A stretch of 64,000 nt of DNA from Entomortierella parvispora E1425 (GCA_020891255.1 BQFW01000007.1:1550001-1614000), one strand, 5' to 3'; counted from the first letter of the stretch, positions 9,309-42,590 are shown. Made by a program: numbers and translations. The notes: a model not told the origin generated them from the sequence alone.

Positions 9309-10543
9309 GGCAGTGGCGAGGATTATTGAGTGTTGTTTGTTGCTGTTGTTTGTTACTATTTCGGATGCAACTCTGTAGAAATAAGATCGAGAAAAGGAAC
9401 GGCGGATGAGAGGGGGAAGGATGAAAAGAAAAGAGGGGAGAGGAGAGAAGAAGGGAAAAAAAAAAAAAAAAAAAGTGAAGGGAGGGAAATCAAGAGATTT
9501 GATTCTGATTAGGAAACATTGCTCGCACAGGACCGTGAACCAACCAGCGTCGTCGCAAGGTCTATGTACCAAGAGCAATGCTCTCTTTTCAACTTACCAA
9601 CTGGGTCAATGGCAACTGTGCGACAGGGATCGAGAGTGAGAGCGGGAGGGGGGGGGCAGGGAGCAAAGGAAGGAGAGGAAGAACAAGGAGGAGGATGACC
9701 AAGAATCACCCTTGACTCCTCTTGCTCCTTCCTTCCTTCCCTCCTTCACTCACACCCCTATCCCCTCGCGTCCTTGCCGTCCCTCGTCCCTGTCTGCCAA
9801 CTTGTCTTCATTTCTCTTGGTCGTTTTGTGTGTCCTTAAGGGTGCGACATCGACAGATCACGTGGTCCTCGCATCAACTGTTCGTCTCGCTCGCACTCGC
9901 AGTTGTTTCTAGGGTTTGTGTTCACGCGTCCTTTGATGCCAATCTGCCCGCTGCTGTCCTCGTTCGCTCTCTTGCAGATGGCAACAGCGTGAACAAACAA
10001 CAACAATTGCGCGAGTCTCTGTCTGCCAAGGTATCGGTCGCTCAGTCAGCAGGAGAACAGGCAGGCACAGGCCAAGACAGACGAAAAAAAGTCAGGTGCT
10101 TCTTTCCTCTTATTGCATGCAAGCACATCACAGGCAGGCTGCCATTCATTCATTGTTCCATTGTCAACCCACCCTTGTTTCCTTTTTCTCTTCTTCTCTC
10201 TTTGTTCATTCACATTCGCCGTCCCCATCCCCTTCCTCATTCCCCCCCACTTCATCAACACAACCATACCCACCACGTAAGCACCCTTGCCTGTGTCCCT
10301 TGCTGCAGCATAGACGCGAGCTTTGCTTGGCCCTACCTTGCGAACGTGGCACGTCCTCCGGCCCATGAAAAAAGTGCGCAACCCTTTGCTTTCCACTTCT
10401 TTTGCTCCCTTGTCCTCCTTTCGAGCCCTCTGTATAATTACCTCGGACCTCGCTGCTATTTTCGTCCCTTTTTGTCCCTTTCCCGTTCCCCACAACTTTC
10501 CCACCAGACACCTCTCTGCCTTGCCTGCCTCCTTGCGACCAGA

Positions 10544-12555
10544 ATGTCCGCCAAAGGCACCCACCCCAGCACTGGTCTGCGGCCGTCTTTCAAACGATCC
10601 CAGCTGCCTGCACAGACACCACTTCCACAACAACAACAACAACAGCAGCAGCATTCACATCTCTCTCCACAACCTCCACAGCTGCATCCGCAGCCACAGC
10701 CACAGCAGCAGCAGCAACGTCAACTGAACAACCCTCGGCAACACAGTCCCTTCTCCTTTGATGCAGATGACTATCTGATCGGTCCTCTCGGTTTTGGCTT
10801 TGCCGAAAGCAAACCTGCCAGTGCGAGTGGCAGTGGAAGTAACAGCAGCAGCAACAGCAGTAGCTACCATCCAAAGTCGACAGCGAGTGTACCTTCTTCC
10901 TCCACACACCCACCCGCCAAAACAGAGAGGACGGAGAAACGCTCGAGTGGCGGCATCTCTTCAACCCCAGCCACGGGTACCACGAGGACACCCTTTGTGT
11001 ACAACAACCCCCTGGCAAATGATGACTCTCATCCGGCGCAGCCTTACCTGGTGGATTTCGGTCACTCTGCTGGCTCCTTCAGCAACGGCAACAACAGCAC
11101 CCGGACCAGCAGAAGCAGCCTTTCGAGTAGCAATAGCAGTATAGCAACCGAGCAGGTGAAAAAGACACCCGCACCAGCGCCTGTCCCCACGCCTGTGCCT
11201 GCGCCTGCACCGCTTGTACCGGTAGCCTCTGTTCGAAAGACGTCGGTGGCTGCCCCGCTACCACCGCCACCATTGCACAAAGATGCGTCATCCTTGGGTC
11301 ATTTCGACGACTTTTTTAGCCCAACCCTTGGAACATGGACGGCACCAGCTTCAAAGCCGACGGCGAGGACGGCACAGATTCCTGACAAGGCCGAACAGCG
11401 ACAGCAGCAACAGCAACAGCAACAACCACAACAGCAACAGCAGCAACAGCAGCCGCAAAAGCTGCAGCATCAGTACCAGCACCAGCAATTGCCAGCCCAT
11501 CAGCATCAGCAGCCATATCAAGTCCAACGCCAGCAGAGCATCAATGACAGCTCACTAGACTTTTTTAGCTCTCTAGACTATCATGCTCCACCGAAATCAT
11601 CTTCATCCACCTCGGCATTCAAAGCGCCTTCCCAGGTTCCTCCATCTTCTACTGCCCCACGATCCTTTACTCAGCCTCCCTCCCCCTCGACAGATTCAGT
11701 CAATGAACGACCCTCGAATGTTTCCTCGATGATGCCGTCATTCGATTTTTCATCCGGGCCTAGCAAGACATCCACCCCTTCGCAACGACGCACCTTCCCA
11801 GACCTTGTGAATGCAACTACTTTTTCGCCGACAGTGAGCACCTCCTCGTTCCCCGTGGACCCGACCAGGAGCGGTACGTCATCGACTAGTCGGACATCCC
11901 CTGAGCCATCAGCATTCACTTTGTCGTCTGGATCCGGCCAAAGACACTCCACAAGCAAGTCCTCCAGCTCAAAGTCATCGAGCGTGCGCACTTCACCTGC
12001 CTTGACGCCCAGTGTAACTCCGTCGCTTGCACCACCCGCTCGTGCTGCGCCCAAAGCACCAGCGCGGATTTTGCAGTCACATCCTCACCCACATCCGACG
12101 CCACCAATCAAATCATCATCATCATCACTGGCGTCGTCTTCGTCGTCGGTTTCTTCCTCTTCATCCCAGAGCCGCAGCGACCCGCTGGCATTGTCGCAGA
12201 GGGAAATTGCGGTCCCCCGTAAAAGCTCGTCTCAGTCAACTACGCCATCGCCGTCTCCTGTCCCACCCGTCCCTCCACAGACCGCAAGACGACAGCAAGC
12301 TGCCAGCCCACTTCCGCCACCTCCGCCTCCACCGCCTCCAACACCTCCACCTTATATGCCCTCGCCTGCTGCTTCTCATTCCAGCATCCCAACATCACCG
12401 TGGCAGGATAGTGACGATGAGGACGACATTGATGTGGACTTTTATCGGGCAGCCCTCCCTCCAATGCTATCAACTCTTCCTGCCTTAGCTCCTGTCGATA
12501 GAATCGACAAATCGTCTCTACCTACCTTAACTGCGCCTGACCTTCAGCCGAGGCC

Positions 12556-12603
<48 letters not shown>

Positions 12604-13684
12604 GCAACAACAGCAACAGCAACAACAGCAACAACAGCAACAACAACAGCAGCAGCCGCAACCGCAACCGCAACATAACCAGCAGAAGCAGAAGCAGAAG
12701 CAGCATGGCCACCAATCGAGCGAGATTAAGACACGGCCCGAACCATTGGGAAAGAAGGAGACGCTGTCTAGGGCCGTGTCACCGCCCTTGTCACCCACAG
12801 GCTCTTCTTCCGGCCAGGTGCTCATGACTGGATACCCTCCACCTCCACCATCTATTCTCTATGCTGACGGTCAAATCACAGTGAGCTCGCTTCACCTGAC
12901 CATTCACTCGTTTTACTTTCCATTGAACAAGCCCGTTACTATTCCATTGCTGTCGATTACGGAAATGGACTCTTTGCCTCTGGAAGGCACGGGAAATGGC
13001 AGCGGTCTATCGAGCTGGCTCAAGTACAAGAACTGGGGTATTGCCTCTCTGTCAGATATATGGTGGGCTCGGGATCAGCGACCTAGTGAAGGAGCGTCCC
13101 TTGGAGGACCATCACTGGCAATGAAAGGAGCTACTGGATTTGAGCCACTGCGACACGTGGTTGTCCGGGTCGAAGGTGAATGGCTTCGAAAAGGGTTTGG
13201 CGTTGAGAGAGAGGAGGGTGTACAGGTGCTGAAAGAAGCCTGGAAGAACGTCAAGGAAAGTGAGCTTGGCCTTCGCCCGCTGAGACCTGCTGCTCACGTC
13301 AACCCCATGGGAGATGATGACGACGAAGACTTGTTAAATGTCGATGACTTTGCAACAGTCGGCTCAAAGAGCAACAACGGAGGATCAGAGAAGCGACGAT
13401 GGCTCCATTATCAGAATACTTGGACATCCTACCCTTTTGCGAATGATTCTCAGTACAATTCGCAAACAGCAAATCAACAGCGTCGCGTGGGAACCCTTGG
13501 AGGTGGCGTTTCTACCTCTTTTTTCTCAGGAGTTGCGGCCTCGTCCAAAGCGCCGAGATACCCCCGAAGCACTCATCCATCATCGTTGACTGCAACTGCT
13601 GGCAGTGGTCATCTTCAGGATGAGAGTTGTGGAGACGATCCCTTATTTATAGATAATGACCTGAATGTCCACGAGACAATTTGA
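10544..13684 (+). CDS. Intronless S/P/Q-rich low-complexity protein (1046 aa) with a C-terminal PH-like globular domain
   Basis: Long ORF; likely start MSAKGTHP at 10544; several poly-Q and poly-S tracts; ordered-looking segment ILYADGQITVSSLHLTIHSFYFPLNKPVTIPLLSI...WLKYKNWGIASLSDIWWARD. Confidence 0.75.
12556..12662 (+). repeat. CAA/CAG trinucleotide repeat encoding a poly-Q tract of about 35 residues
   Basis: A pure (CAA)n run followed by mixed CAG/CAA, in frame within the 10544-13684 CDS. Confidence 0.95.
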
Positions 13685-14161
13685 GAAATCCGATAAATTT
13701 GAACATGTTAATTCTGTCCCTGTCCTGTCAAGAGGTGTGATTGCATGGACCCCATGGCCGTGATAGTAAGGTGGGGGGGGGGAGGGCTATCCTACTGGAT
13801 GCCGTTTTGTCCATCTTTTGGTCGCAATGACTGTTGTGTCCATGTCAAGGGGGGTCATGTGCTACCAGGGACAGAGGGACAGGAGCAGCATAAAAAAAAG
13901 AGAGGGGCAACGGAATTGCCGCCGTGATGTGTGCACGCCCCCTACCTAGCGCCACTGAAGAACAGTGATTTTCGTTTTGCTCCTGTTTTTTTCTTTTCTC
14001 TTTCTTTCCTTCTTTTGCTTCTTTTTTTTCCCTTGCGCACCTTCCTCACCGCCTCCTGTACTGCTACTCGCTCCCTATCGATTCCATCTCCTTCCATCTG
14101 CCCACAATACATCCCTGCACCAGCCTTTCTCCTCTATCTTCAAAGGACATCCAATCGCATC

Positions 14162-14542
14162 ATGGACACAAACTCCACAGATCCGTCGTCGAGTCCATCA
14201 GGAGTTCCAAGCGGACAACCAATGGTACGTTGCCGATCCTAATACAATGTTAACAAAATGTCCTGAGAGAACCCATGCTTCGTTTTTTTTTCTTTCCAAT
14301 GACTGATGTTTTTTTTTTCTCTCTTTTTTTAGGCCACAGTGACGGCGGCATTTGTAATTCTTGGAGTCACTGCGGGTGCCATACTTCTTCACCTGGTCCT
14401 TACTTTAATCTTCAAACGAATCGCCAAGAAGACCATTTGGCAATTCGATGACGATCTTGTGAAATATTGGTAAATACCGGGAATGGGGACCCACTGATAA
14501 AAATGATGACTTCATTCATTTAGACCGGGTATCTCTCAAACT

Positions 14543-14573
<31 letters not shown>

Positions 14574-16134
14574 CTTTCGTTCTTTTCATAGCAAAAAACC
14601 AACGTTCATCATGTTTCCGGTGGTAGCGCTATTGATCACGATTCAACTAGTGACTTTACCCTTGGGCGTTTACGGGACCTTGAACCACGCGCTCATCATC
14701 GTCTTACTGTTCACGATCTCGTACCTGTTGGTGATGCTGATCAAATGTGGGTCCTTGGCTGTGGGCAGGAACAATAGCCATCTCAAGGATTCAGCACCCA
14801 AACGCGCGCGGGAGGTCGAAACTCAGATTGTAGTGATGACCAGGATCGTCCAGGGCATGGTTTGGTTGTTGGGATTGTCGGGTATTGCAATGACTTTTCC
14901 GAATGCTTGGCAGGTGGGCGTTTCTCTTTTGGCCTCGGCCAGTGTGTCTGCGTTGTTGTTGGGGTTTGCCGCGAAGCCGTCCATTGAGGTAGGAATGAGC
15001 AGTAGCCACAAGTGAAAACAGAGAGCAAAATACGTCAGGACTAAAAAGCAACTAGGAGCTGACTCTTTTGTCGTTTCATAGAATGCATTGGCCTCGCTGA
15101 CGATTGCGTTGACACAACCATTTATTCTCGAGGACCAAGTGACAGTGAATGGTGAGGTTGGACATATTGAAGAGATCCAATCGCAATATGTCATTGTCAG
15201 GACTCTAGATGAGCGTCGACTGGTTGTTCCATTGACCTGGTTCTTGGCCAATGTAGGTCCCCTTCTGTTCTTTCGATCTCTCGTTGTCGACGGACCCATG
15301 AAGAATCTTTGTTCTAATATCCATCTCAATTCCTTTTAGATCTTTCAAAACTGGTCCAGAAACTCTTCTCAGCAAATAGGAGAGTGCAAGCTGTACGTGG
15401 ATTATACAATGCCTGTGCCCAGGATCCGACAGTATTTTCTCAAATTCGCAAGGTCGCATCCTTTGTACGATGGACGGCACTGTGCTCTCTTGGTGACGGA
15501 TTGTTCTGTGAATACGATTACGCTGACATGCCAGGTCAGCGTAGCCAACGCAATGGATGTAATGCAAGTGACCTCGGATATCAGAGAAGCCATGGTCGAA
15601 TACATCGCCAAGAAGGTGACAGCGTCGGCGACGACATCAGAGGCGAGCTCGCCACCAGACACGATCAAGAGCAATCTTCCTCCACCCGCCAAGATAACGC
15701 CAGCCACCACCCCGCCAGCAGATTCGACCAATCCCACTCTGTCATTGCTGGGACTAGACTGGAGGGAGCATAAAAAGAGACATCATCCAGAAGCATCTCA
15801 TACGCATCCAGGGGGAACCCCTCCTTCCCCTCCGTTGCCTCCGCTTAGTCAAGAGGATGAAAAGATGGGGGAAGGCAGCAGGATGTATCTGAACTGCCCC
15901 AGTATCAACGGCAAGGATGCTGCCAGCAAAAACCCTACAAACTCAGTTTGCGAAAAATCCATTGATCCTAGCGAGACTTCGACGGCTGTTTCTTCGACGG
16001 GCTCGAGGGATCATGTTAGAGTCGACGTTGATGGCAGTGGACAGGACATGACCATTTCTGGCTTGACGAGGAGAGGTGCGAGGGACACAGCTCCAGGTGA
16101 AGCTGTAGTGCCGACTATTGTCACAGAAAAGTAA
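14162..16134 (+). CDS. Small-conductance mechanosensitive channel (MscS family, bacterial-type), 5 exons, about 520 aa
   Basis: Exons 14162-14224, 14333-14469, 14592-14988, 15082-15252 and 15340-16134 join in frame. TM helices are followed by LGFAAKPSIE|NALASLTIALTQPFILEDQVTVNGEVGHIEEIQSQYVIVRTLDERRLVVPLTWFLAN|IFQNWSR. Confidence 0.9.
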
Positions 16135-16430
16135 CTTGTTCATTTATTCTTTACTATATTTTGTATATATCCACCTATAAACGCGTTGTCTCGCTTTGAA
16201 TGATGAGCCATGGTCAACCATGGAGCGATCACGTGATATTTTGTTTTCCAAGCCGCAATTTTTTTCTTTTTTTTTCAAAGCCCAACTCTGTTTGCTCCAT
16301 TGCATCAACGACTTGCTTTCGAGACCATCAAGGACATCGTTCGTTCGCCATCTTCTGTCGCGGTCGCCATTTGACAAGCAGGACACCAAACGCCTTCAAA
16401 CAAACAAATAAAAAGCCCCTCATCAACATA

Positions 16431-17859
16431 ATGAACGCGGAAGCCCAGTTGAAGATTCGCGGACTGATTCAGCTCGCCCTCGGCTACGTTGTCGAGCCTC
16501 AACCCCTCTCTGTGCCCGCCGTGCCCGAGACTTTGGACGGACTGATTGAACAATTGCAAAATGGATTGAACTTGAACGGATCTGAGCCTGTGGTGGCTCC
16601 CGTCCTCGCTCGCGAGTCTCAGGAAGAAGTCTGGGATGGTGAATCCTTTGGAAATCGCCTTGGTAAGTGCAGTTGGCATCCATGGCCTTTGCCAGAGATA
16701 GAGCTGCGGCAAACCCCTCCTCCGTCCTTTTTTTTTTTTTTTTTTTTCTCTTCCAAAAGAACTGCGGCTGCCTCTCTGACTTCTCTCCCTTCAATTTTTT
16801 TCCCCCCCACACAAATTAGCTGGATTGGGAAAGCTGGTAGCAAATGATGTGACCAAGGTCTCTTTGGCTTGCAAGCCCCCCGCGGAGTCCAAGACTGTCA
16901 TTGGTATGGTGGAAGCCCTCGGAGAGACTTGTTTCCGCCTTGCAGGATTTGTGGACTCGATCCCCGTCAAGGTTGCAGGACAGACATACAAGCGCGAGGT
17001 TCAGATTCTGTCCAACAACATCTTTGAGGCCGTCGCAGGACTTTTGAACGCGTTCTTGGAGCAACCCGACGAGAGAGTGTTGCAACTTCAAAACAAGAAT
17101 GCGGCCTTGAAGGGTGTTTCTCAAGGATTGAGCAGAAACAACCAAGGAGCGTCCTCGGAAAGCGGATCGGGAGCCAACAAGGACTTTTATTTGATCAAGA
17201 CGGGTATTGTCTGGGAGGCTTGCGAGATTTTCGAGAAGGCGAGTCGGTCCAACCGGGAGGCTGTGGCCAAGAAGTGGGGCGACATGATGTCCACGATGGA
17301 GGATGCCATTGCAGAGGTCAAGGAGATGATTGATTCCAACGATGAAAAGGATGAGCTCAAGGGGGATGACGATGACGAGGATGACAGCGGCAACGAGAGC
17401 GATGACAGCTGGAACGACGATGAAAAGATGACAGAGGAGGAGAAGCAGTTGAGCATTCAGGCCAACTCTCATTTGAAGTTGACACGGTTGTTGCTCAAGA
17501 AGTTGCAGCAAAGGTGTCTTGATACCCAGCAAGTTGCCAAGATTGTGATCCCTTCGGCAAACTCGCAACGCTCGGACGTGACACTCCAGCCTTCAGATCT
17601 GGCCAGGATGTGGGATCAGCTGTACGAGGCTGCTCAGGGCATTGTGGCGTTGGCCGATGAGATTGCTACTTCACTCTACAGTCCCCAGGATCAGGCAGTG
17701 TTGATGACGCTTTTGAGACAGTTGAGCAGGAAGAACCACGACTGCATCTTGGTGGGCCGATTGTTTGTCAAGGGTCAGGCTGATCAAGAGCAGTGGATGG
17801 ATATGTGCGAGGCCCAGTCGAAAAAGATTTTGGATGCAATTGTCCTTTTGCAGTCGTAA
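16431..17859 (+). CDS. Cyclin-D1-binding protein / GCIP-like protein, 2 exons
   Basis: Exons 16431-16662 and 16820-17859 are in frame. A helical protein with a central acidic tract (MEDAIAEVKEMIDSNDEKDE..DDSWNDDEKMTEEEK), typical of the GCIP/CCNDBP1 family. Confidence 0.7.
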
Positions 17860-31389: not shown

Positions 31390-32695
31390 GTTGATGTCAG
31401 TTGTTTGTTAAGCAGGGGAAGGGTGCTGGTGCAGGCAAGAAAAATATTGGAGAGTATGAAAAGCCAGGAAGAAGCAAAAAAACAGTGCTCTTTTTATGTA
31501 GTTTTTTTCTTTCGGTTCGAAAAGGACGTTCCTGTCCCCACTGCATGGAGGCGCTTTAGGTGACCTGACAGTCTTCGGCCTGCAACGCAGTCCGAAAACA
31601 AAGGCAGCCTCGTTCCCAACGGACATTTATGATTGTTTGAACAAATAAATTCTTGGCTGTTCAAGCACTGGATCCGTTGGGGCTGGAATGTTAGGTTGTC
31701 CCACTCAGGTAATAGGCAGACAGTAGCTTTCAGGATATTTGGACCCGTTGACAATTTCAGGGTATGCAAGGATACACCGACTGACCAGGGACACGACAAG
31801 CACTGTCAAAATACTCATGGCACCTGTCTTTGCTTCAAGGAGAAATAAGAGTGACGAAGGACAGACTCCAAGGCAGGAGGCCATTGGGGATAGGACGGTG
31901 CACTTTGTAAAGGTGCAACGTGGAGGCAGGCAAGTGTCTGTATGTTGATTTTAATTTAGAGGCCTCTGTTGGCGCTCGTGGTTGTCAACTGCCTGGTATC
32001 CATGTGTTCCTGTCCAGAACGAGGGGTATGAACAAGCCCAGATGATCCATTTCAAATGTGGCTCGCTACAGCAGCGCTTCCTCTCCTGCAAGTATCCATC
32101 CGTTCCAGGAATCAGTCAGTTGAACCAATACGACATTGCCGCAAAGACTCAAACTAGCAGTAAGGACCATGAGAGTTTCTGTTTAAAGAGGACTGAGTAT
32201 CGATTGTTGACGCGTCTCCCTAACTCTCCATTTTTTTTCAAAAGTTGCGACCATGGTATGGACAAAGATGGCTGACATGCCCACCAAATACTTTGGAGCC
32301 GCCTGTGCCGCTTCAGGTGATTCATTCATTATCTGGGGGGGGGGTACAGCATCAATTCTTCGGATATGATGGCGGTGACAGCTAATTGGGATGGCCCTGC
32401 CATTCTGCCAATATTTGGGCAATGAGTTACACCCCGACTTCTAAAACCATGACTGGAGGATCCGGTAAAGGCCTTTGAGTCTCTCTAGAAAAGAGCTCGA
32501 GGATTCCTGGCATTGTGCTCGTCTATGTCAGGCATGGTCATATCCTTCCATTTAGTATGAACAAACCAAGCAAGTATCAAAAAAGGTCGTTTTTATTGAT
32601 GCACATTTGTGTATGACGAACTCCTCTATCACGACGAAAGGTTGCACCGCTTGCCATTTCTTTGTTTTTGCTCCACGCGCCACCAAATCTGGTCT

Positions 32696-32704
32696 CTGAA
32701 TCAG
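32696..32704. repeat. Left 9-bp target-site duplication CTGAATCAG
   Basis: An identical direct copy lies at 40301-40309, immediately outside the right TIR. Confidence 0.9.
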
Positions 32705-33725
32705 GAAGCTCTGAACCCAGCCCCTCTTTGCTCACTCCTTCACTTCAGAGGGGCTGGGCGCAAATCTCACCCTTTCCTATGGATGACCCAAAATAATTTT
32801 TTCGTCCAAAAAAGGAAAAAAAATTCTCTGATAAATAGTGTAATTTAAAAACTTTAAATAAATTCACTCTAATAATAATAAAATAGTGAGAGTAATGCCA
32901 GCCATGCAGCCATGCCATCGCTCGTCGCCCGGCTTGAATGGGGTTAATTTCTTCCATTTTTTCATTTTCAATGCCACCACTTTCTTTCATAAACCCCGCG
33001 TTCCGATCTTGCATTCAGCTCCTGCCACCTCTTCTTTATACCCTTCATCTGATTAAATGACAAAGATGGCAAGCAAAAGACCAATCGAGCAGAGGTGAGG
33101 AGACGCGTCTCGGGTGTCCATGATGCTCAGAGTCGCCCACGCGTCCATCTGCTCTATTTTTCTTCATCTCTTCATATTTTCTGTTGTAGTCATGATGCTC
33201 TTAGCAAATCTGATCAAGATATCCCGGGAACGCCGAGAAGATCGCGTAGCACCAAGGTGAGTAGCTTGATGTGGTGCCTGGTGGCCTCTTCCTGGTGTGG
33301 CCTCTTCTAACTCTGTGATTTACAATAGGGTGAGGGACGATTTCGTCTTGATTCCCCAGGTGCTCCTCCGCGAACCCCGCAAACAACACAAACCCCACGA
33401 GCACCACGAGCACCACGAACTCCACGAACCCCGCGCACCTCACAAACCTTACAAACGCCAAGATTCATACAGTCACCAATTGTGGCCAACCAAGTATGAA
33501 AAAAATCGTTAAAAAATATGTGCTGCTCGCGTTTTCTTTTCTAACAGATGTATCCACCTCCTCCCATTCATATCGATTAGGGAACTACCAATGGTTCTGG
33601 TGCTACCGATATGGCCCAACCTTTACCCTTTGTCATGGAGGCACAGGCTCTTTCTCCGACTTCTCAGGCTGCGTACATTGGAGGATCAACGCAATTCAAC
33701 ATTGGAAAAAATTCGACGCCACCCA
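32705..33725 (+). repeat. Left terminal inverted repeat (1021 bp)
   Basis: Reverse complement of 39280-40300. Mirrored ORFs in the track are identical and their coordinates always sum to 73005. Identity stops after ...GACGCCACCCA. Confidence 0.95.
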
Positions 33726-35973
33726 TCACTGGAGAAGAACCGCCACGACTCAATGTTGGAGAGAATTTGACGCGATCCAATGTTGGAGAAGAATCGCCGC
33801 GACCCAGCAATGCGTCGGAGGAGTTGACGTTCGATCCTTTCTGTGATAACACTGATGGAGAACCAATCATGACGTGGGGTTCTGATAACTATTATGTAAG
33901 AACCCCTTTGAGGAAAAAGTGGTCATCGATGCAGCCATCGTCATCAGCTCCTTCTTCACCCGCCAATTCTGTCGGCTCTCCGTTGCAGTCATTCTCGTCA
34001 CCATCAAATGCGGTTCTTAGCCAACCTTTACCGTTTATACAAAAAAGCGATGAACGCGAAGACGAGAGTGATGTCCAGGTAAGTCGAGTTTAATTATGAA
34101 ATGGCGATGTTCTGGACTTGCATTAACTCTCACATTAAAATGCATATATGTCTGTAATCTTCATACTGCAGGATCCATTATGTAAAGAGGCTATTCAAGC
34201 TTGCCGAAAGCGTTTTCATCACTCACCAAAGGAGGAGCAGCTTCGTGTTGTCAAACATATATACAACAAGCAGGATTGCTTACTGCTTGCGCCCTGCGGG
34301 TGGGGAAAAACACTTGTATTTTCTCTGCCAATGGTGATGTGGAAGGACAAGATTACGGTCGTCATTTCGCCGTTGATTGCCCTGATGCAGGATCAGATAA
34401 AGGTATGCCAGCATACAATATACCAGTCTAACAGGTATACTTTTTTCTAACATATCGCGCAATGCGACCCTGTGTTAATACTCTAGAAACTCAAAGAAAA
34501 GGATGTCACTTGTTTGCTACTCTCGACCTACAACGGCAATCGAGTTAACGACAGTGACATTAAATTAGTTAAGGAGGGACATTACAGAGCTGTGTTCATG
34601 TCGCCAGAAGTCATTTTCGGGAAAGGATCTACTGCATGCAAGGTTCAGGACCTTTGGAACAATAAGTATTGGAAAAGTCAACTATGCTCCATCGTCGTAG
34701 ATGAAGTCCACTGTGTAGATAAATGGAAAGATTTTCGGCCGTATTATTCGCAAATTGGATCATTGCGTGGTAAGGTACCTGGGGTGCCGATCGTAGGCCT
34801 GACTGCAACCCTCCCACCCGATTCGCTCCAGGAAATCAAGAATAGCGTCTTTCTCGCCTCGTCCACCGTTCATGTCATTCGTGTGGATGACATTCGTGAT
34901 AACATCCAGCTCGAAGTTCATACCTTTTCACTAAGGAATCGAGTCAGACAACTGGCGAAGTTGCTGGACAATACAAAGACGATTGTCTATTTTGACAGCA
35001 TCGCACTTCTCAGAGATGTACAGGACAAGTTAAGGCCATTGAGGCCTGATCTGCGAATGGACGCATTTTTCTCAACCCGCCTTAGTTCTTCCAAGGATAA
35101 AGTCCTGCTCAAGTTCATTAATAGCGAGATTGATGTCCTGTTGGCTACTGATGCCTGCGGCATGGGATGCGATATCTCAGATGTTATCACTGTGTTCCAA
35201 TATGAGTAAGTTGAAACGTAACTAAGGTTGGACAATGCGGATGAAATGAGAGACGATCTTACTTACTTCAAGATATTTTCAATGATATGAAGTCTGCCTC
35301 ACGATTTGACGAGTCTTGTGCAGAGGTTCGGTCGAGCAGCGAGGGGTCCTGGAACTAAAGGCTTTGGGATCCTCTTGGCGCCTCCAACTACCAGCAGGAA
35401 ATACAACAAGAGACCTGACATCTTAAATTTCGTTGCCCCCCAATTGACAAGGACAAGGACAAGGAAAAGGACAAGGAAAAGGACAAGGACAACAGTCGGA
35501 GGAAATGTCGGTGGCATGTGGTGGATGAATATCTAGGGAACAAAATATCCTCTCGTACCAAATGTTGTGATGTATGTCTCGGTGAGTCTTGTCGCCGCAA
35601 GACGACCGAACTTACTGGTCAAATTGGGCCCGAACTGACTATACCAAAGGGGAAGAGCGCGGACAAAGATCAGGATGTAGGGAGGAACAGGTTATTGGAG
35701 TGGAGGAAGAACGAGTGCAAAAAATGGACAGGAGAAGAAGTGTCCTTCGTGGACTTCGAGCTTTGCGTTTTGCCCGATAAAGTACTCGCAAGGTTGTGCT
35801 ACAAGCTCTTTGCGGCCACCACTACTGAAATGGTGAGGTTGATAGCTGACAGCTGTGATTTTGTGCCAGTGGATTGCGATCATTTTGAAATGATCGCTGA
35901 GGTTGTGGCGAAAGCCCTGGGCGAGATAGAAAGTACGAAAAATGATCAAAATTCCTTGGTAGTCGAAGAATAG
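33057..35973 (+). CDS. RecQ-like SF2 helicase of the AcademH element (about 800 aa if repaired; one apparent frameshift near 35430)
   Basis: APCGWGKT (I), SPLIAL (Ia), DEVH (II), TAT (III), ATDACGMGCD (V), QRFGRAAR (VI), and a Zn-binding CR..Y.G..CCDVC. Predicted exons 33057-33094, 33190-33256, 33329-33493, 33581-34078, 34172-34402, 34487-35205, 35293-35973. Confidence 0.88.
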
Positions 35974-36139
35974 CCCATCAATTGACCGAGCCAAGATGAC
36001 AAGGAGATGGAGTCACTGCTTGCATCTGATGACCCTGCACAACCAAACATTTACAGCCGGCCGGGCCATTTAACATCGCACGAGCCCAGGTCCCATTCAT
36101 TCATTCTTCTTTAGTTAGTATTATTATTGTCATAAAATA

Positions 36140-39100
36140 TCATTCAGCTACAACATGGTCGTTGGCCTCGACTTCCTCCATATCCACAGTATCGTAGCTA
36201 TCGCTTTTTCTGAGAAAACATGCTATAGCACTCTCTGCCATTTTGTGCGCGCCAACAGTTTGAAGGTCAACTACCACGGATGGAGAAGGCCGAGTGTCTT
36301 GCTTGGATGCCCAAAGGATTCCACAGAACTGGAGATTGTCTCTGACAAGCTCAACATCCTCTTTCGTGGATGGTTTTTTGTGAGCAGTGCTGTTGTACTT
36401 GGTTTCTATCTCCCGTTCGAAATTACGTGCAATGGTTTGAAATATCTCGACGTTTGTTGAGATTTGTTCGCGAAGATAGTCCCAGCTTGCGTTTGGCCCT
36501 TTCGCTGCATGAGTGGCTTTGAGGAGGAAGTTGATGATTTCTTGGTACATGTCCGTTGGCATCCATGCTTGAGGAATGCCTTTAGGGTTCACCAGCATGC
36601 TTGAAAGGACCCTGTGTTCCCATTCACGCGTCCACAGGTGGCGCATGCCGTGGAGAAATCGTAGTAGCTCAAGGGCATATTTGGAATTGCCTCCGCCGTG
36701 CATCATCAATGCCACGGTTGGTAGCACACATCTTATCCGCCCAAGATCGCCAGCCTTAATAGCAGCAGAGAGTTCGATGAAAACGATCATGTCTCGGAGG
36801 AAGAGAAGAGCATTGATATCTGCTGGAGTGCAGGGCCGGCCATTGAGCAAGGGATTGGCATGCTGCAGACTAGCTATGGCGTAAATGACAAGATCAACGA
36901 ATCTTGTCATGTCAGACTCCACTGAGGTATGAAGATCTTCCCAGAGTACCATTGACATTGCGTCGAAAACAATCTTCAGCAGTTCACTGGTTGGCTTGTA
37001 CTCCGGTTTATCCGTGTTAAAGCCTTTACTGGCCAATAGGGAAATGAATGATGCAAGTGAGCCTGGGGTATTGGCATCGGCGCCAAGATGTGTCTTGTAG
37101 ATCGTGGAGCAAAGTGTCATTTGGAGATGGAAGAGCTGAAACGTAGGATGTACCCAACCAAGACTGCCGAATGGATCCGACTCAACCATGCGGTGTACCT
37201 TGAGAGATAAAAGTCTAGAGACAGTCATCTGATCACCGGCCACTATGATGTCCCTGGTGGTCTTGCTGAACCATTCATCGCTTAAGCCGAGATCTATCTT
37301 TGTTATGTTTTCCAGCACTGCGAGATTTCCGGCAATAGTCGACTCATCGATCTTCATGGTTGGCAATGGAAAAGTTTTCGTCTTAACAACCTTCAGTACG
37401 TCAATGGCCGGCATGGGAATCACGCAAACACTGGGTGATCGAGGCAAAAACTGCGAAATGGCAGTCGACAGATGTGTGCGGCAGGCAGCCCTAGTCATGG
37501 TGCGGTCGGTGCTTGTGGGGAAAAAAATGCTGGCGCTTGGCTCTGGCCTGTCCACTCTGAAGCAAACCATTGGGGATGATCGAGGTATTTCAGCACTCCT
37601 GGAGCTCCCGAGATTTGAGCTGTCGGGAATCAGAATCACGGTAGCAGCTGTGCCGTTGTCGAACGTGTCTCTTTTTCCTACTCTCTGGTGATGGTGCCTT
37701 GTGGCAATGTTGATGTTGTCGTATACAATGTAAAAGTCGTTGTTGAGGACTGCCACCTTCACCCTCTCCTGTGCGTCTTTGGTCAAGGCCTTCAATGCCC
37801 TGTGAATCTGATCATATGACACGCAAAGTCCAAGAGCCGACAAAGTCTCTAAAACTCGTCTGGGAGCTCCCAGGCAGTGAAGATAGATGCCCATTACCAT
37901 CTGAAAAGCATTGCATTGCTGGGATCTCAAGAACATGAGCATAGCAGAGATGCAGCCACGAACAGAGCTGGGTTTTCGACCGCGCCTGCGAGCAGGTGTA
38001 GCGCTTCCCACAGTTTCTTCATCATTGTTGCCGATGTTGTCACTGCCGTTGTTGACGGTGTTATCGCCGTTGCTGTCGATGTCGTTGTCGCCGCTATTGT
38101 CGCTGTTGTCGCTGTTGCTCTCGGTGTCGTTCTCACTGTCGTTGCCGTTGTTGTTGCCTTCGTTTACTCTGGTGCTACCATCGCCACTGTTCGTACCATT
38201 TCCCTTGCTAAGCATGCCGTCCAAAAGTCGTGTCAAAAAAGAAGCTTCGCCGGCGTAAGAGTCGAGAAACCCGTTCCTGAGGATCTTATCGATATTTTCC
38301 TCCGACATTCTATTGTGCGGGAATCGGTAGGCTGGGTGTGGGCCATCGTCACCTACGACGCCGTTCTTGAGGCGATCAAGCTCCCGTTTAGTCCTTGAGA
38401 CAACGACGTCTACAGCGCTGTTCACAAATGGGGCATCCCATTCTTTGATCTTGCGTAACTTTTGGCTCCAAATTTTGATAACGCGACGAGGACCGTCTTT
38501 GTGATAGAATTGATGAGTCCAGCGCTTGATGTTTTCATCTTGAGAGTTAAACAGCTTCTCGAAGAAGGCGGGAAGTGAAAGCTGTTGTTCCCTGATGTAG
38601 TTAAGAATCATTGCAACTTTGTGGGTAGAGGAATGCTAAAAAGAAAAATAATTGTTAGACGCCTGTGGGAGTGACATATTGCTGGTTTCTTTGGACAACC
38701 GGTCTTCACATACATGCGGCTTCCTTGTTGATCCGGGCATTCGATCCTCTCCATTGGTCGCTCTGAGTGTGGGGGAATCGGGCATGCACATCTATACGTA
38801 ATTCGTAATTCACTTGAGAGGTAATTCATAAATTACGATAAGGATGTTTTCGAAACCATGTGCTGAATTTACCTGCAGTGTCGATGAGTTGAACTGCTCC
38901 TCCATGTCGGCCGTTAAAGTCCTAATCCTATCACTGAATTTCACTGCATGTTAGAAATTTGCGTAAACCTGGGGGCAACTAAAGTTGCGACAGGGTAGGC
39001 AGGTTGGGGTATCTCATGCTTACGCGAACTGAGGGGTGCTCAGATTCCTAGATCGTCGCGAGTTTTTTCTTGTGGGGGTCCTCATGTAATCGTTCCCAGA

Positions 39101-39948
39101 AACCCATATCATCGGCGTCTCTGTTCGATTACTTCCTAATCTCCGAAGCCAGAATGGGCTATCGAATGGCTCTCCATCAGTGTTGTCACAGAAAGGATCG
39201 AGCAGAGACTCCTCTGACGCATGCTTGGGTCGCGGTGATTCATCTCCAATGCTGGGTCGCGGCGACTCTTTTCCAATGTTGGGTGGCGTCGAATTTTTTC
39301 CAATGTTGAATTGCGTTGATCCTCCAATGTACGCAGCCTGAGAAGTCGGAGAAAGAGCCTGTGCCTCCATGACAAAGGGTAAAGGTTGGGCCATATCGGT
39401 AGCACCAGAACCATTGGTAGTTCCCTAATCGATATGAATGGGAGGAGGTGGATACATCTGTTAGAAAAGAAAACGCGAGCAGCACATATTTTTTAACGAT
39501 TTTTTTCATACTTGGTTGGCCACAATTGGTGACTGTATGAATCTTGGCGTTTGTAAGGTTTGTGAGGTGCGCGGGGTTCGTGGAGTTCGTGGTGCTCGTG
39601 GTGCTCGTGGGGTTTGTGTTGTTTGCGGGGTTCGCGGAGGAGCACCTGGGGAATCAAGACGAAATCGTCCCTCACCCTATTGTAAATCACAGAGTTAGAA
39701 GAGGCCACACCAGGAAGAGGCCACCAGGCACCACATCAAGCTACTCACCTTGGTGCTACGCGATCTTCTCGGCGTTCCCGGGATATCTTGATCAGATTTG
39801 CTAAGAGCATCATGACTACAACAGAAAATATGAAGAGATGAAGAAAAATAGAGCAGATGGACGCGTGGGCGACTCTGAGCATCATGGACACCCGAGACGC
39901 GTCTCCTCACCTCTGCTCGATTGGTCTTTTGCTTGCCATCTTTGTCAT
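36140..39948 (-). CDS. Academ-type (DUF6589-like) putative DDE transposase, predicted 1101 aa, 7 exons
   Basis: 823-aa core ORF with IVYDNINI, AGDQMTVSRL, LFHLQM and PTDMYQEIIN (candidate D, D, E residues). Predicted exons 39948-39911, 39815-39749, 39676-39512, 39424-39024, 38933-38873, 38791-38714 and 38635-36140 all join in frame at GT..AG sites. Confidence 0.85.
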
Positions 39949-40300
39949 TTAATCAGATGAAGGGTATAAAGAAGAGGTGGCAGGAGCTGAATGCAAGATC
40001 GGAACGCGGGGTTTATGAAAGAAAGTGGTGGCATTGAAAATGAAAAAATGGAAGAAATTAACCCCATTCAAGCCGGGCGACGAGCGATGGCATGGCTGCA
40101 TGGCTGGCATTACTCTCACTATTTTATTATTATTAGAGTGAATTTATTTAAAGTTTTTAAATTACACTATTTATCAGAGAATTTTTTTTCCTTTTTTGGA
40201 CGAAAAAATTATTTTGGGTCATCCATAGGAAAGGGTGAGATTTGCGCCCAGCCCCTCTGAAGTGAAGGAGTGAGCAAAGAGGGGCTGGGTTCAGAGCTTC
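39280..40300 (-). repeat. Right terminal inverted repeat (1021 bp)
   Basis: Reverse complement of 32705-33725; ends ...GGGTTCAGAGCTTC. Confidence 0.95.
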
Positions 40301-40309
40301 CTGAATCAG
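40301..40309. repeat. Right 9-bp target-site duplication CTGAATCAG
   Basis: Direct repeat of 32696-32704. Confidence 0.9.
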
Positions 40310-41639: not shown

Positions 41640-42590
41640 CGTCCTGTCCGTCCGCAAGAACAGCCGCCCTCCATTCGGCTTCATTGGCTCCATTTCGCGT
41701 CTAGAACAAGACATTGGCCCGAGCCCGCCACCAAGAGTCTTTCGCGACTGCTCTTCTGCGGTCGCAAGAAAGGAACAAGGTTCTGTACTTGGTCCCTCGG
41801 GAGGGTGTTGAGCTTCTTTGCTGAAGCACTACCCTCTAGATACCATGGGAGTTCCTGGCGTGCTCAACGGCCCCTTTCGGGGTCTTGAGCGACTACCTGC
41901 GCCTCCTTTTGCCGTTGCTGACATGGTTCTGTACCTGGTTCCTCGGCGGGTATTGAGCTTCCTCGTTGAAGAACTACCTGCCTGATACCTTGATGAGTTC
42001 CTGGCGTGCTTCACCTGCGCCTTGCTTCTGCCTTTATTCTTGGTCTGGCCATCCCCATCTGCAAGAACAGCTGCCTTCCATTCAGCTCATTGGCCGGCCT
42101 CTTTGGCCCGCCTCATTCGCGACCAAGTTCAAGACATTGACCCCGAGCCCGCCACCAAGAATCTTTCGCGACTGCTCTTCTGCGGTTGCAAGAAAGGAAC
42201 AAGGTTCTGTACTTGGTCCCGCGGGAGGGTGTTGAGCTTCTTTGCTGAAGCACCACCCTCTAGATACCATGGGAGTTCCTGGCGTGCTCAACGACTCTTC
42301 CGGGAGTCTTGAGCCACTACCTGCGCCTCCTTTTGCCGTTGCTGACATGGTTCTGTACCTGGTTCCTCGGCGGGTATTGAGCTTCCTCGTTGAAGAACTA
42401 CCTGCCTGATACCTTGATGAGTTCCTGGCGTGCTTCACCTGCGCCTTGCTTCTGCCTTCATTCTTGATTTGGCTCCCTCGTCTGCAAGAACAGCTGCCTT
42501 CCATTCAGCTCATTGGCCCTGCCCTCATTCGCGGCCGAGTTCAAGACATTGACCCCGAGCCCGCCTTCAAGAAATTTCGCAACTGCTCCA
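41640..42590. repeat. Tandem repeat with a unit of about 420 bp (about 2.3 copies) and an internal sub-duplication
   Basis: CAAGACATTG recurs at 41707, 42130 and 42542; long near-identical blocks lie between 41700-42060 and 42125-42480. Confidence 0.9.

What the first reader, a model, noticed from the sequence alone, without database searches (positions are those of the whole stretch)
32705..40300. Apparently recent, full-length helicase-encoding AcademH-like transposon with 1-kb TIRs
Seen: exact ends, a 9-bp TSD (CTGAATCAG), 1021-bp TIRs, and convergent RecQ-like helicase and putative DDE transposase genes. Known: the AcademH lineage is defined by a helicase plus 9-10 bp TSDs and is among the least characterised cut-and-paste superfamilies; the role of the helicase is unknown. 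Inference: the intact TSD, matching TIRs and uninterrupted transposase point to a young and possibly still mobile element in an early-diverging fungus.
Basis: partly seen in the sequence, partly recalled or inferred. Interest (0 to 1): 0.8.

Follow-up and report, generated by a model that had tools for sequence, protein, structure and literature searches.

The report
Young helicase-carrying transposon with targeted insertion
This is a real, very young 7.6-kb jumping gene of the soil fungus Entomortierella parvispora that carries a transposase and a RecQ-type helicase, fits the little-studied AcademH group, and almost always lands exactly 9 bases from the short host DNA word TTGGTGGCG.

Summary
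Window 32705-40300 is a 7596-bp element with 1021-bp TIRs that are 100% identical. It is flanked by the 9-bp duplication CTGAATCAG.

The genome (E. parvispora E1425) holds nine full-length copies at different loci. They differ only by 1-nt homopolymer indels. Eight have perfect, mutually different 9-bp TSDs, so transposition is recent.

The minus-strand gene encodes a 1101-aa protein (Pfam DUF6589). Its model is an RNase H-like DDE transposase, closest in fold to hAT Hermes. The plus-strand gene is a RecQ-family helicase.

AcademH is the best fit: DDE transposase plus helicase, 9-bp TSD, no XPG domain. I could not compare it directly with Repbase Academ sequences.

Two further points:
- 11 of 13 insertions in five Mortierellaceae species have TTGGTGGCG-like sequence exactly 9 nt beyond the TSD on one side. 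That indicates landmark-guided target choice.
- Both genes start inside the TIRs and share an identical 138-aa N-terminus.

As assembled, this copy's helicase is frameshifted at a C6 run. That may be Nanopore noise.

The scan met other copies of this family earlier on other DNA of this genome (s1-193887, s1-185073).

It is a new member of a known kind, with two properties I found no published description of.

The parts
32678..32686 (-). Target-site landmark TTGGTGGCG, read outward from the element. It lies 9 nt (32687-32695) beyond the left TSD.
   Evidence: The same word, or a variant one to three mismatches away that keeps the GGTGGC core (GGCGGC in P. verticillata), is at the same offset and orientation on one flank of 11 of 13 insertions in 5 species.
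32696..32704 (.). Left target-site duplication CTGAATCAG
32705..33725 (+). Left terminal inverted repeat, 1021 bp, 100% identical to the right one. It holds the presumed promoter, the start codon (33057) and the first exons.
32716..32758 (.). Subterminal palindrome: 12-bp stem CCCAGCCCCTCT / AGAGGGGCTGGG, starting 11 nt from the tip and mirrored at 40247-40289. It is probably a transposase-binding or hairpin-forming site.
   Evidence: (z -3.7 to -9.5; present in 5 species with different loop or inner sequence)
33057..35536 (+). RecQ-like helicase gene as assembled (P0312, 653 aa). Exons: 33057-33092, 33188-33256, 33329-33493, 33581-34078, 34172-34402, 34487-35203, 35294-35533, then the stop codon. 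Motifs GWGKT, DEVH, LTAT, GMGCD and QRFGRAAR are present.
35436..35441 (+). C6 homopolymer. Copy L001 has C7 here, which keeps the helicase in frame (799-aa model). In this copy the frame is lost.
   Evidence: The assembly is Nanopore-based (PMC8759367).
35442..35973 (+). Conserved helicase C-terminal region with a RecQ-type zinc-binding cysteine cluster (CRWH...CCDVC). In this copy it is out of frame with the helicase core.
   Evidence: (tblastn E 4e-48 to Podila, also conserved in 3 other species)
36140..39948 (-). Transposase gene (P0061, EMPS_05277, 1101 aa; Pfam DUF6589 at residues 637-1022). Exons: 39948-39913, 39817-39749, 39676-39512, 39424-39023, 38932-38873, 38791-38714, 38635-36143, then the stop codon at 36140-36142.
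36539..37720 (-). Catalytic DDE triad: D576 (37718-37720, in VYDNIN), D738 (37232-37234, in AGDQMT) and E969 (36539-36541, in YQEIINF). A long all-helical insertion lies between the second D and the E.
39280..40300 (-). Right terminal inverted repeat, 1021 bp. It holds the same start codon (39948) and the same first exons as the left one.
40301..40309 (.). Right target-site duplication CTGAATCAG

Best explanation
This is an autonomous, very recently active cut-and-paste DNA transposon of the AcademH type in Entomortierella parvispora.

Shown:
- It is 7596 bp long, with perfect 1021-bp TIRs and a 9-bp TSD.
- Nine copies in the genome show no substitutions between them.
- The 1101-aa DUF6589 protein has an RNase H-like DDE core (D576, D738, E969) and a helical insertion domain, and is structurally nearest to hAT Hermes.
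- A convergent RecQ-family helicase has all ATPase motifs and a RecQ-type zinc-binding module.
- Both genes start at the same ATG inside the TIRs, so both proteins begin with the same 138 residues.
- Insertions sit so that TTGGTGGCG lies exactly 9 nt beyond the TSD on one side.

Inferred:
- The transposase binds the conserved roughly 60-bp tips (GAAGCTCTGAAC plus a 12-bp palindrome).
- It excises the element by DDE chemistry, probably of the hAT, P or Transib kind.
- It integrates with a 9-bp stagger at a position measured from a DNA landmark.
- The landmark word is about 13-fold over-represented in host DNA and conserved across four genera. My best guess (about 50%) is that a host DNA-binding protein on that word tethers the transposition complex, as Sap1 does for Tf1 or TFIIIB for Ty3.
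- Direct reading by an element-encoded module is about 40% likely. Candidates are the conserved helical N-terminal domain of the transposase, or the helicase acting as a MuB/TnsC-like target selector.
- Each TIR acts as promoter plus 5' exons, which would co-regulate the two proteins and give them a common N-terminal module.
For: - Ends, TIRs and TSD.
- Copies: nine loci with identical boundaries, eight of them with different perfect 9-bp TSDs. All differences between copies are homopolymer indels.
- Transposase: DUF6589 at E 2e-91. D260 is invariant and D98 and E491 are at least 90% conserved in a 90-sequence alignment. The AF2 model has pLDDT 91.6. VIA-align gives Z 12.4 to Hermes, 8.9 to P element, 8.7 to Tn5, 8.3 to ISCth4 and 8.1 to RAG1.
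- Helicase: the 37 best PDB sequence matches to P0312 are all RecQ-family, with E down to 1.6e-36 for WRN. A zinc-binding cysteine cluster is present.
- Same architecture elsewhere: long, 98-100% identical TIRs, the same tips and a 9-bp TSD in Podila verticillata, P. humilis and Mortierella alpina; an older Linnemannia schmuckeri copy has degraded TIRs and a 6/9 TSD.
- Landmark motif: plus a prospective hit on L015. Background frequency is 17 exact sites in 174 kb against 1.3 expected.
- Shared N-terminus. The two arms differ by in-frame indels just inside the perfect TIR. Start codon, exon length, reading frame and splice signals are conserved between genera.
- Literature: AcademH makes 9-10-bp TSDs (PMC10045372). 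Academ profile hits were reported in Mortierellomycotina (PMC5751038).
Against: - No direct sequence comparison with curated Academ or AcademH transposases was possible, so the superfamily name rests on architecture, TSD length and elimination.
- No XPG-fused relative, which would tie DUF6589 to AcademX, was seen among the closest hits.
- Activity is inferred from copy identity, not observed. No empty-site allele was examined.
- Eight of nine copies, this one included, carry the C6 state that breaks the helicase frame. Other copies have frameshifts in the transposase. These may be Nanopore errors, but that is unproven.
- Two of 13 insertions lack the motif (L005, L007), and L007 has an irregular TSD.
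- What reads the motif is unknown. The TIRs themselves do not carry the word.
- The first 138 shared residues are low-complexity and are not detectably conserved in annotated homologues of other genera. No RNA evidence was examined here.
Confidence: 0.8

Rival explanations
1. The element belongs to another superfamily, not Academ. It could be a divergent Mutator-like element (9-bp TSD, long TIRs, two convergent genes, as in maize MuDR) or an undescribed superfamily whose transposase happens to be Pfam DUF6589.
For: Academ homology was not tested directly. The 9-bp TSD, the promoter-bearing long TIRs and the convergent two-gene layout also describe MuDR (my own knowledge). The fold search gives a generic 'DDE with insertion domain' signal, with ISCth4 (IS256 family) at Z 8.3.
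Against: No MULE, SWIM, hAT-dimerisation, Transposase_21 or KDZ Pfam hit appears even at E<=1. Hermes ranks clearly above the IS256-type match. A helicase partner together with a 9-10-bp TSD is the published signature of AcademH. Academ profile hits were already reported in Mortierella genomes.
Confidence: 0.1
2. The TTGGTGGCG landmark is read directly by an element-encoded protein, not by a host factor. The reader would be the conserved helical N-terminal domain of the transposase, or the helicase acting as a target-selecting ATPase.
For: The spacing is exact to the base pair and the orientation is fixed in 11 insertions. A roughly 135-aa N-terminal domain is conserved across Mortierellaceae transposases. 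Published comment links the helicase to the long TSD of AcademH, which would place it at the target. The two proteins share an N-terminal module.
Against: The word is absent from the TIRs where the transposase must bind. It is strongly over-represented in host DNA and unchanged across genera whose element proteins are only 45-66% identical. Both facts fit a host factor better. The model of the N-terminal domain was too poor to identify a DNA-binding fold (pLDDT 58).
Confidence: 0.4
3. The TIR-encoded 'shared exons' are an annotation artefact. On this view the TIRs carry only promoters and 5' UTRs, and the real proteins start further in. AUGUSTUS would then simply predict the same exons twice because the sequence is identical.
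For: The shared 138 residues are Pro/Thr/Arg-rich and low in complexity. They found no homologues outside this species. Gene models in other species often start inside the unique region. I examined no RNA data.
Against: Just inside the perfect TIR the two arms still align, with indels of 27 and 51 nt (both multiples of three) and a conserved DPFCDNTDGEP block. All six introns of the 1101-aa model keep the frame, and five of the six donor sites begin with GT. The short first exon (ATG, a K-R pair, then a GT donor) is conserved in E. parvispora, P. verticillata and P. humilis. A second exon of identical length and frame is conserved between E. parvispora and P. verticillata, along with GTGAGT and CTAAC signals. 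The annotation used RNA-seq hints.
Confidence: 0.2
4. The repeat structure is an assembly artefact or a segmental duplication, not a transposon.
For: The assembly is Nanopore-based, and the arms are suspiciously perfect.
Against: Nine loci on six different contigs share boundaries identical to the base. They have unrelated flanks and different 9-bp duplications. Relatives in four other species have the same tips, and all but the old Linnemannia copy a perfect 9-bp TSD.
Confidence: 0.01

Closest known systems
AcademH lineage of Academ DNA transposons (Kojima 2020, Mobile DNA 11:15; cited in PMC10045372 and PMC10799480)
   Same: It has a DDE transposase plus a separate SF2 helicase, 9-10-bp TSDs, TIRs and no XPG nuclease. 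AcademH occurs in fungi including Mucoromycota, and Academ profile hits were reported in Mortierella genomes.
   Different: Membership by sequence is untested here. I found no mention of two properties in the papers I could read: insertion at a fixed distance from a TTGGTGGCG word, and roughly 1-kb TIRs that encode a start codon and exons shared by both genes.
MuDR / Mutator of maize (my own knowledge)
   Same: It makes a 9-bp TSD. Its long TIRs carry the promoters of two convergently transcribed genes, a transposase and a helper.
   Different: No MULE or SWIM domains are present. The helper here is a RecQ helicase, not MURB. The TIRs are about five times longer and contain coding exons.
hAT transposase Hermes (PDB 4D1Q, 6DWW)
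   Same: It is the best structural match to the catalytic region: an RNase H-like DDE core with a large all-helical insertion domain before the catalytic E (Z 12.4, about 300 residues aligned).
   Different: Sequence identity is about 10%. There is no hAT dimerisation domain or BED finger by Pfam. The TSD is 9 bp, not 8 bp. TIRs are very long, and there is a second gene.
Landmark-guided integration: Tf1-Sap1, Ty3-TFIIIB, Tn7 TnsD-attTn7, Dada transposons in small-RNA genes (my own knowledge; Dada cited in PMC5751038)
   Same: The insertion point is set at a fixed distance and orientation from a short DNA landmark, not within the duplicated target itself.
   Different: The enzymes and element classes differ. 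No tRNA or Rfam RNA gene lies at the sites.
KolobokH and Helitron (other helicase-encoding eukaryotic DNA transposons; PMC10799480)
   Same: They carry a helicase.
   Different: Kolobok makes 4-bp TTAA TSDs (my own knowledge). Helitrons have no TIRs or TSDs and use a Pif1-type helicase fused to a Rep nuclease. Here the helicase is RecQ-type and separate from the transposase.

Membership tests
AcademH (Academ superfamily) | Transposase groups with curated Academ or AcademH transposases by sequence | not testable with these tools
   Repbase and Dfam proteins are not available, and Kojima 2020 is not held. The only Pfam hit is DUF6589. The name rests on elimination of other superfamilies and on literature reports of Academ in Mortierellomycotina.
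AcademH (Academ superfamily) | DDE catalytic core on an RNase H-like fold | tested here: met
   Conserved D, D and E. AF2 model pLDDT 91.6. Z 12.4 to Hermes, 8.9 to P element and 8.1 to RAG1.
AcademH (Academ superfamily) | A helicase encoded in addition to the transposase | tested here: met
   DEAD and Helicase_C. RecQ-family PDB hits with E 1.6e-36. The pairing is conserved in Podila and Linnemannia gamsii loci, and helicase-coding sequence is also present in the M. alpina locus.
AcademH (Academ superfamily) | 9- or 10-bp target-site duplications | tested here: met
   Perfect 9-bp TSDs in 8 of 9 copies in this genome and in 3 relatives. An old copy has a degenerate 6/9 TSD.
AcademH (Academ superfamily) | No XPG nuclease domain (separates it from AcademX) | tested here: met
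   No XPG hit in the element's ORFs or in 36 long relatives.
Mutator / MULE | MULE transposase domain, often with a SWIM finger | tested here: not met
   No such Pfam hit at E<=1.
Mutator / MULE | 9-11-bp TSD and long TIRs | tested here: met
   This feature is shared with AcademH, so it does not discriminate.
hAT | 8-bp TSD and C-terminal hAT dimerisation domain | tested here: not met
   The TSD is 9 bp. No PF05699 hit. Only the fold resembles Hermes.
Kolobok / KolobokH | 4-bp TTAA TSD | tested here: not met
   The TSDs are 9 bp with variable sequence.
RecQ helicase family (for the helicase gene) | SF2 motifs I-VI of RecQ type plus the RecQ C-terminal zinc-binding cysteine cluster | tested here: met
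   GWGKT, DEVH, LTAT, GMGCD and QRFGRAAR are present. The 37 best PDB hits to P0312 are all RecQ-family. A CRWH...CCDVC cluster lies in the conserved C-terminal region. In this copy the zinc module is out of frame as assembled.

The most novel reading that the evidence does not exclude
Mortierellaceae AcademH elements are landmark-guided cut-and-paste transposons. The transposition complex measures exactly 9 bp from an oriented TTGGTGGCG word before making its 9-bp staggered cut. The RecQ-like helicase would take part in this target selection and would be linked to the transposase through an N-terminal module encoded in the inverted repeats. That would give the unexplained Academ helicase a role, and it would be a rare case of distal, sequence-guided targeting by a eukaryotic DDE DNA transposon. 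The motif association itself is about 90% secure. The probability below is for it being a genuine, previously undescribed targeting mechanism of the element, whoever reads the word.
Probability: 0.5. Interest if true: 0.8.

Novelty: new member of a known kind. Interest (0 to 1): 0.62.

Why it matters
Academ is among the least studied cut-and-paste superfamilies, and the role of the AcademH helicase is unknown.

This genome offers a culturable fungus with nine essentially identical full-length copies. At least one copy has a complete transposase gene, and at least one has a complete helicase gene. Public Nanopore, Illumina and RNA-seq data are available. Mobility and the helicase requirement therefore become directly testable.

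The fixed-distance landmark (TTGGTGGCG, then 9 nt, then the 9-bp TSD) is a concrete prediction that can be falsified. If it is confirmed genome-wide, it would show sequence-guided target choice in this superfamily. It would also be of interest for directed integration.

The TIR-encoded shared exons show how a transposon can co-regulate two proteins and give them a common module using its inverted repeats.

Tried and rejected
- The AcademH primary paper (DOI and PMC7165386) and Yuan & Wessler 2011 are not held. I found no supplement or paper linking PF20231/DUF6589 to Academ.
- I searched for an XPG-fused (AcademX-like) relative. The search seeded with a basidiomycete DUF6589 protein was swamped by Agaricomycete hits. 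A Pfam scan of 36 long relatives showed only DUF6589.
- Sequence search of the transposase against PDB found nothing. Only the fold comparison worked.
- I tested tRNA and small-RNA genes as targets, as in Dada elements. No tRNA and no Rfam family lies near the insertion sites.
- The landmark word is not a subterminal transposase site inside the TIRs: there are no exact matches and only chance-level near matches.
- A metagenome scan for the conserved 20-nt tip gave 0 hits.
- The AF2 model of the transposase N-terminal domain had pLDDT 58, too poor for a fold search, so its fold is unassigned.
- P0010 could not be located on a contig. The L014 (Linnemannia gamsii) ends were not resolved beyond an internal 250-nt inverted repeat.
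- Assembly artefact and segmental duplication were rejected.
Full report
**1. Observation**

The element spans window 32705-40300 (7596 bp). Its tips are GAAGCTCTGAAC... and ...GTTCAGAGCTTC, and CTGAATCAG flanks both ends at 32696-32704 and 40301-40309. An ungapped comparison of the two arms gives no mismatch over the first 1021 positions, after which they diverge. The repeat finder reports 1089 nt at 98% for two reasons. The TSD is nearly palindromic, and the arms stay homologous further inward. The terminal 31-mer occurs only at the two ends of the window, with 0 expected by chance.

**2. Host and copies**

- The main minus-strand ORF (36140-38611, 823 aa) is Pfam DUF6589 (E 2e-91). Its best database match is a protein of Entomortierella parvispora.
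- Exact-protein look-ups located nine full-length copies in assembly GCA_020891255.1, on six contigs. L004 is this window's own locus.
- All nine align to the element from its first to its last base, with unrelated flanks.
- Eight have perfect 9-bp TSDs, all different: CTGAATCAG, GCACTCATA, ACAGAACTT, CTTTTTTTA, GGTAGTCCT, AAGTGCCAG, GGAAAGCAG and GGGGGGGGA. L007 has an irregular one.
- A multiple alignment shows that every difference among copies is a 1-nt indel in a homopolymer run. There are no substitutions in about 68 kb.
- The genome was assembled from Nanopore reads and polished with Nanopolish and Pilon (PMC8759367). These indels may therefore be residual errors in multi-copy DNA.
- Either way, the family amplified very recently.

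**3. Transposase**

- The annotated protein P0061 (EMPS_05277, 1101 aa) maps exactly onto this copy in seven in-frame exons: 39948-39913, 39817-39749, 39676-39512, 39424-39023, 38932-38873, 38791-38714 and 38635-36143. Five of the six intron donor sites begin with GT; the exon 4 boundary as mapped does not, and may be shifted by a split codon.
- At the G-run near 38770 this copy's reading matches the conserved homologue sequence (PDSP...NG...STRK), whereas copies with one more G do not. This copy's transposase gene is therefore complete.
- A search of 1.8 billion representative proteins found 2421 relatives. Those looked up are from Mortierellaceae and Agaricomycetes.
- In a 90-sequence alignment one Asp is invariant, and a second Asp and a Glu are at least 90% conserved. 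They correspond to D576 (VYDNIN), D738 (AGDQMT) and E969 (YQEIINF) of P0061.
- AlphaFold2 on that alignment gave pLDDT 91.6 and pTM 0.92. The strand and helix order is that of an RNase H-like core, with a large helical insertion before the Glu.
- Foldseek ranks Hermes and P-element transposases first.
- VIA-align gives these scores:

| Structure | Z |
|---|---|
| Hermes | 12.4 (about 300 residues aligned) |
| P element | 8.9 |
| Tn5 | 8.7 |
| ISCth4 | 8.3 |
| RAG1 | 8.1 |
| Transib | 7.3 |

- There is no sequence-level PDB relative and no other Pfam family even at E<=1.

**4. Helicase**

- The annotated protein P0312 (653 aa) maps exactly to 33057-35533 in seven exons.
- Its 37 best PDB sequence matches are all RecQ-family: WRN at 1.6e-36, then RecQ, BLM, RECQ1, RECQ5 and RECQ4 (pieces).
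- The motifs GWGKT, DEVH, LTAT, GMGCD and QRFGRAAR are present.
- Downstream, in another frame, 35422-35970 encodes a region conserved in four other species (E 4e-48 to Podila). It contains a RecQ-type zinc-binding cluster, CRWH...CCDVC.
- Copy L001 has C7 at 35436-35441 where this copy has C6, and it yields an in-frame 799-aa model.
- So, as assembled, this copy's helicase lacks its zinc module. Whether that is real cannot be decided here.

**5. Relatives**

- The same layout is found in Podila verticillata. L010 spans 9595-16743 with TIRs of about 825 bp at 100% identity and the TSD TCGAAAAGA.
- It is also found in P. humilis. L013 spans 8724-16295 with 900-bp TIRs at 100% and the TSD TTATCTCGC.
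- Mortierella alpina (L011) carries a composite bounded by the TSD AGGAAAACG.
- Linnemannia schmuckeri (L015, 9162-16034) carries an old copy with a TSD matching at 6 of 9 positions.
- The first 22 nt of the tips are identical in three species. In L. schmuckeri the first 18 nt are the same, and the M. alpina tip shares only the first 6 nt (GAAGCT) exactly.
- A palindrome starting 11-12 nt from each tip, with a 12-bp stem in three of the species, is kept in all five species while its inner sequence changes.

**6. Superfamily**

- Published statements I could read say that AcademH elements encode a helicase and make 9-10-bp TSDs, while AcademX elements make 3-4-bp TSDs (PMC10045372).
- AcademH occurs in Basidiomycota, Ascomycota and Mucoromycota (PMC10799480).
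- Academ profile hits occur in Mortierella genomes, and the Academ RNase H domain had no Pfam model in 2017 (PMC5751038).
- Every defining feature I could test is met: DDE fold, separate helicase, 9-bp TSD, TIRs and no XPG.
- The defining domains of MULE, hAT and KDZ, and the defining TSD length of Kolobok, are not met.
- Direct similarity to curated Academ proteins is untested, because Repbase is unavailable and the primary paper is not held.
- I therefore file the element as AcademH-type at about 0.85-0.9.

**7. Target landmark (not in the finding)**

- I read each flank outward from the element. One flank of each insertion carries TTGGTGGCG, or a variant one to three mismatches away that keeps the GGTGGC core (GGCGGC in P. 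verticillata), at positions 19-27. That is exactly 9 nt beyond the 9-bp TSD, and always in the same orientation.
- It is present in seven of the nine E. parvispora copies, plus P. verticillata, P. humilis and M. alpina.
- It lies on the helicase side in four E. parvispora copies and on the transposase side in three. Random sidedness is what identical TIRs would predict.
- Information content is high only at those eight positions. There is no mirror-image site on the other flank.
- I noticed the pattern on three copies. Of the ten insertions examined afterwards, six match within one mismatch at the predicted offset. In background DNA the per-site, per-strand frequency of such matches is about 2.5e-4 (87 in 174 kb on both strands). 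My estimate from that is P of about 1e-17.
- The last locus, L015, was fetched after the prediction had been written down. It shows a perfect TTGGTGGCG at the predicted position.
- In this window the word is at 32678-32686.
- The exact word is about 13-fold over-represented in the host DNA I hold: 17 occurrences against 1.3 expected in 174 kb. It is often extended to TTGGTGGCGC(A).
- No tRNA or Rfam RNA lies at the sites.
- The word is absent from the TIRs.
- L005 and L007 lack it.

**8. TIRs as genes**

- Both annotated proteins start at the same ATG, 352 nt inside each TIR (33057 on the plus strand, 39948 on the minus strand). They share their first 138 residues.
- Just inside the perfect TIR the two arms still align, with indels of 27 and 51 nt (both multiples of three) and a conserved DPFCDNTDGEP block.
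- Across genera, the short first exon (ATG, a K-R pair, then a GT donor) is kept in three species.
- A second exon of identical length and frame ending at a GT donor is kept between E. parvispora and P. verticillata. GTGAGT and CTAAC signals are also kept, while the surrounding TIR sequence diverges.
- The annotation used RNA-seq hints. I examined no reads, and the shared residues are low-complexity with no homologues outside the species.
- I rate the shared coding N-terminus at about 0.8.
Follow-ups on other copies (s1-185073, s1-193887) reached similar readings. The tests above are my own.

**9. Mechanism**

Shown:
- the anatomy of the element;
- the copy history;
- the domain identities;
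- the landmark association.

Inferred:
- DDE cut-and-paste transposition with a 9-bp staggered integration;
- recognition of the conserved tips and the palindrome by the transposase;
- TIRs acting as promoter plus 5' exons for both genes;
- target choice set by a landmark 9 bp away.

I lean slightly (about 50 to 40) to a host factor bound at the over-represented, deeply conserved word, rather than an element-encoded reader. The role of the helicase remains open. Candidates are opening or selecting the target (in line with the published link between helicase and long TSDs), acting on the terminal palindromes, or helping repair of the donor site.

**10. Verdict**

This is a real, young, probably active AcademH-type transposon. 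It is a new member of a known kind. It has two properties I could not find described, and it offers a practical system for asking what the Academ helicase does.

Noticed in passing
window 12099-50606 and loci L001-L009 outside the elements: The 9-mer TTGGTGGCG occurs 17 times in 174 kb of non-element DNA, against 1.3 expected from base composition. It is often extended to TTGGTGGCGC(A). It looks like a host cis-regulatory word, but its binding factor is unknown.
   Followed up: partly
window 41700-41770 and 42125-42195: Two near-identical segments of about 45 nt lie 424 bp apart: ...CGCAGAAGAGCAGTCGCGAAAGA(C/T)TC-TTGGTGGCG-GGCTCGGG... Both contain the landmark word. This may be a local duplication or a repeat within a gene.
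   Followed up: no
L011:9704-22907 (Mortierella alpina CDRYGW010000016.1): A 13.2-kb composite is bounded by one pair of tips and one 9-bp TSD (AGGAAAACG). It contains two DUF6589 genes and two sets of internal 0.5-0.7-kb inverted repeats, so it is a nested or rearranged pair of elements. It lies next to Crinkler-domain and Hint/homing-endonuclease-domain genes.
   Followed up: partly
L007:9640-9648 and 17242-17250: This is the one copy with an irregular duplication: GGCCCAAAA on one side and CCCAAAAGG on the other, sharing only CCCAAAA. It also lacks the landmark word. The cause could be an aberrant integration or homopolymer errors.
   Followed up: no
L015:16499-17254 (Linnemannia schmuckeri): A compact inverted-repeat structure of about 750 bp (arms of 47-80 nt at 93-98% identity) lies about 0.5 kb from the old element copy. 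It may be a MITE or a foldback element.
   Followed up: no
L005:17247-17290: In one of the two copies without the landmark at +9, a related word (CAGTGGCA) lies about 11 bp (one helical turn) further out. This is a single case and may be chance.
   Followed up: no
I did not examine it.
   Followed up: no
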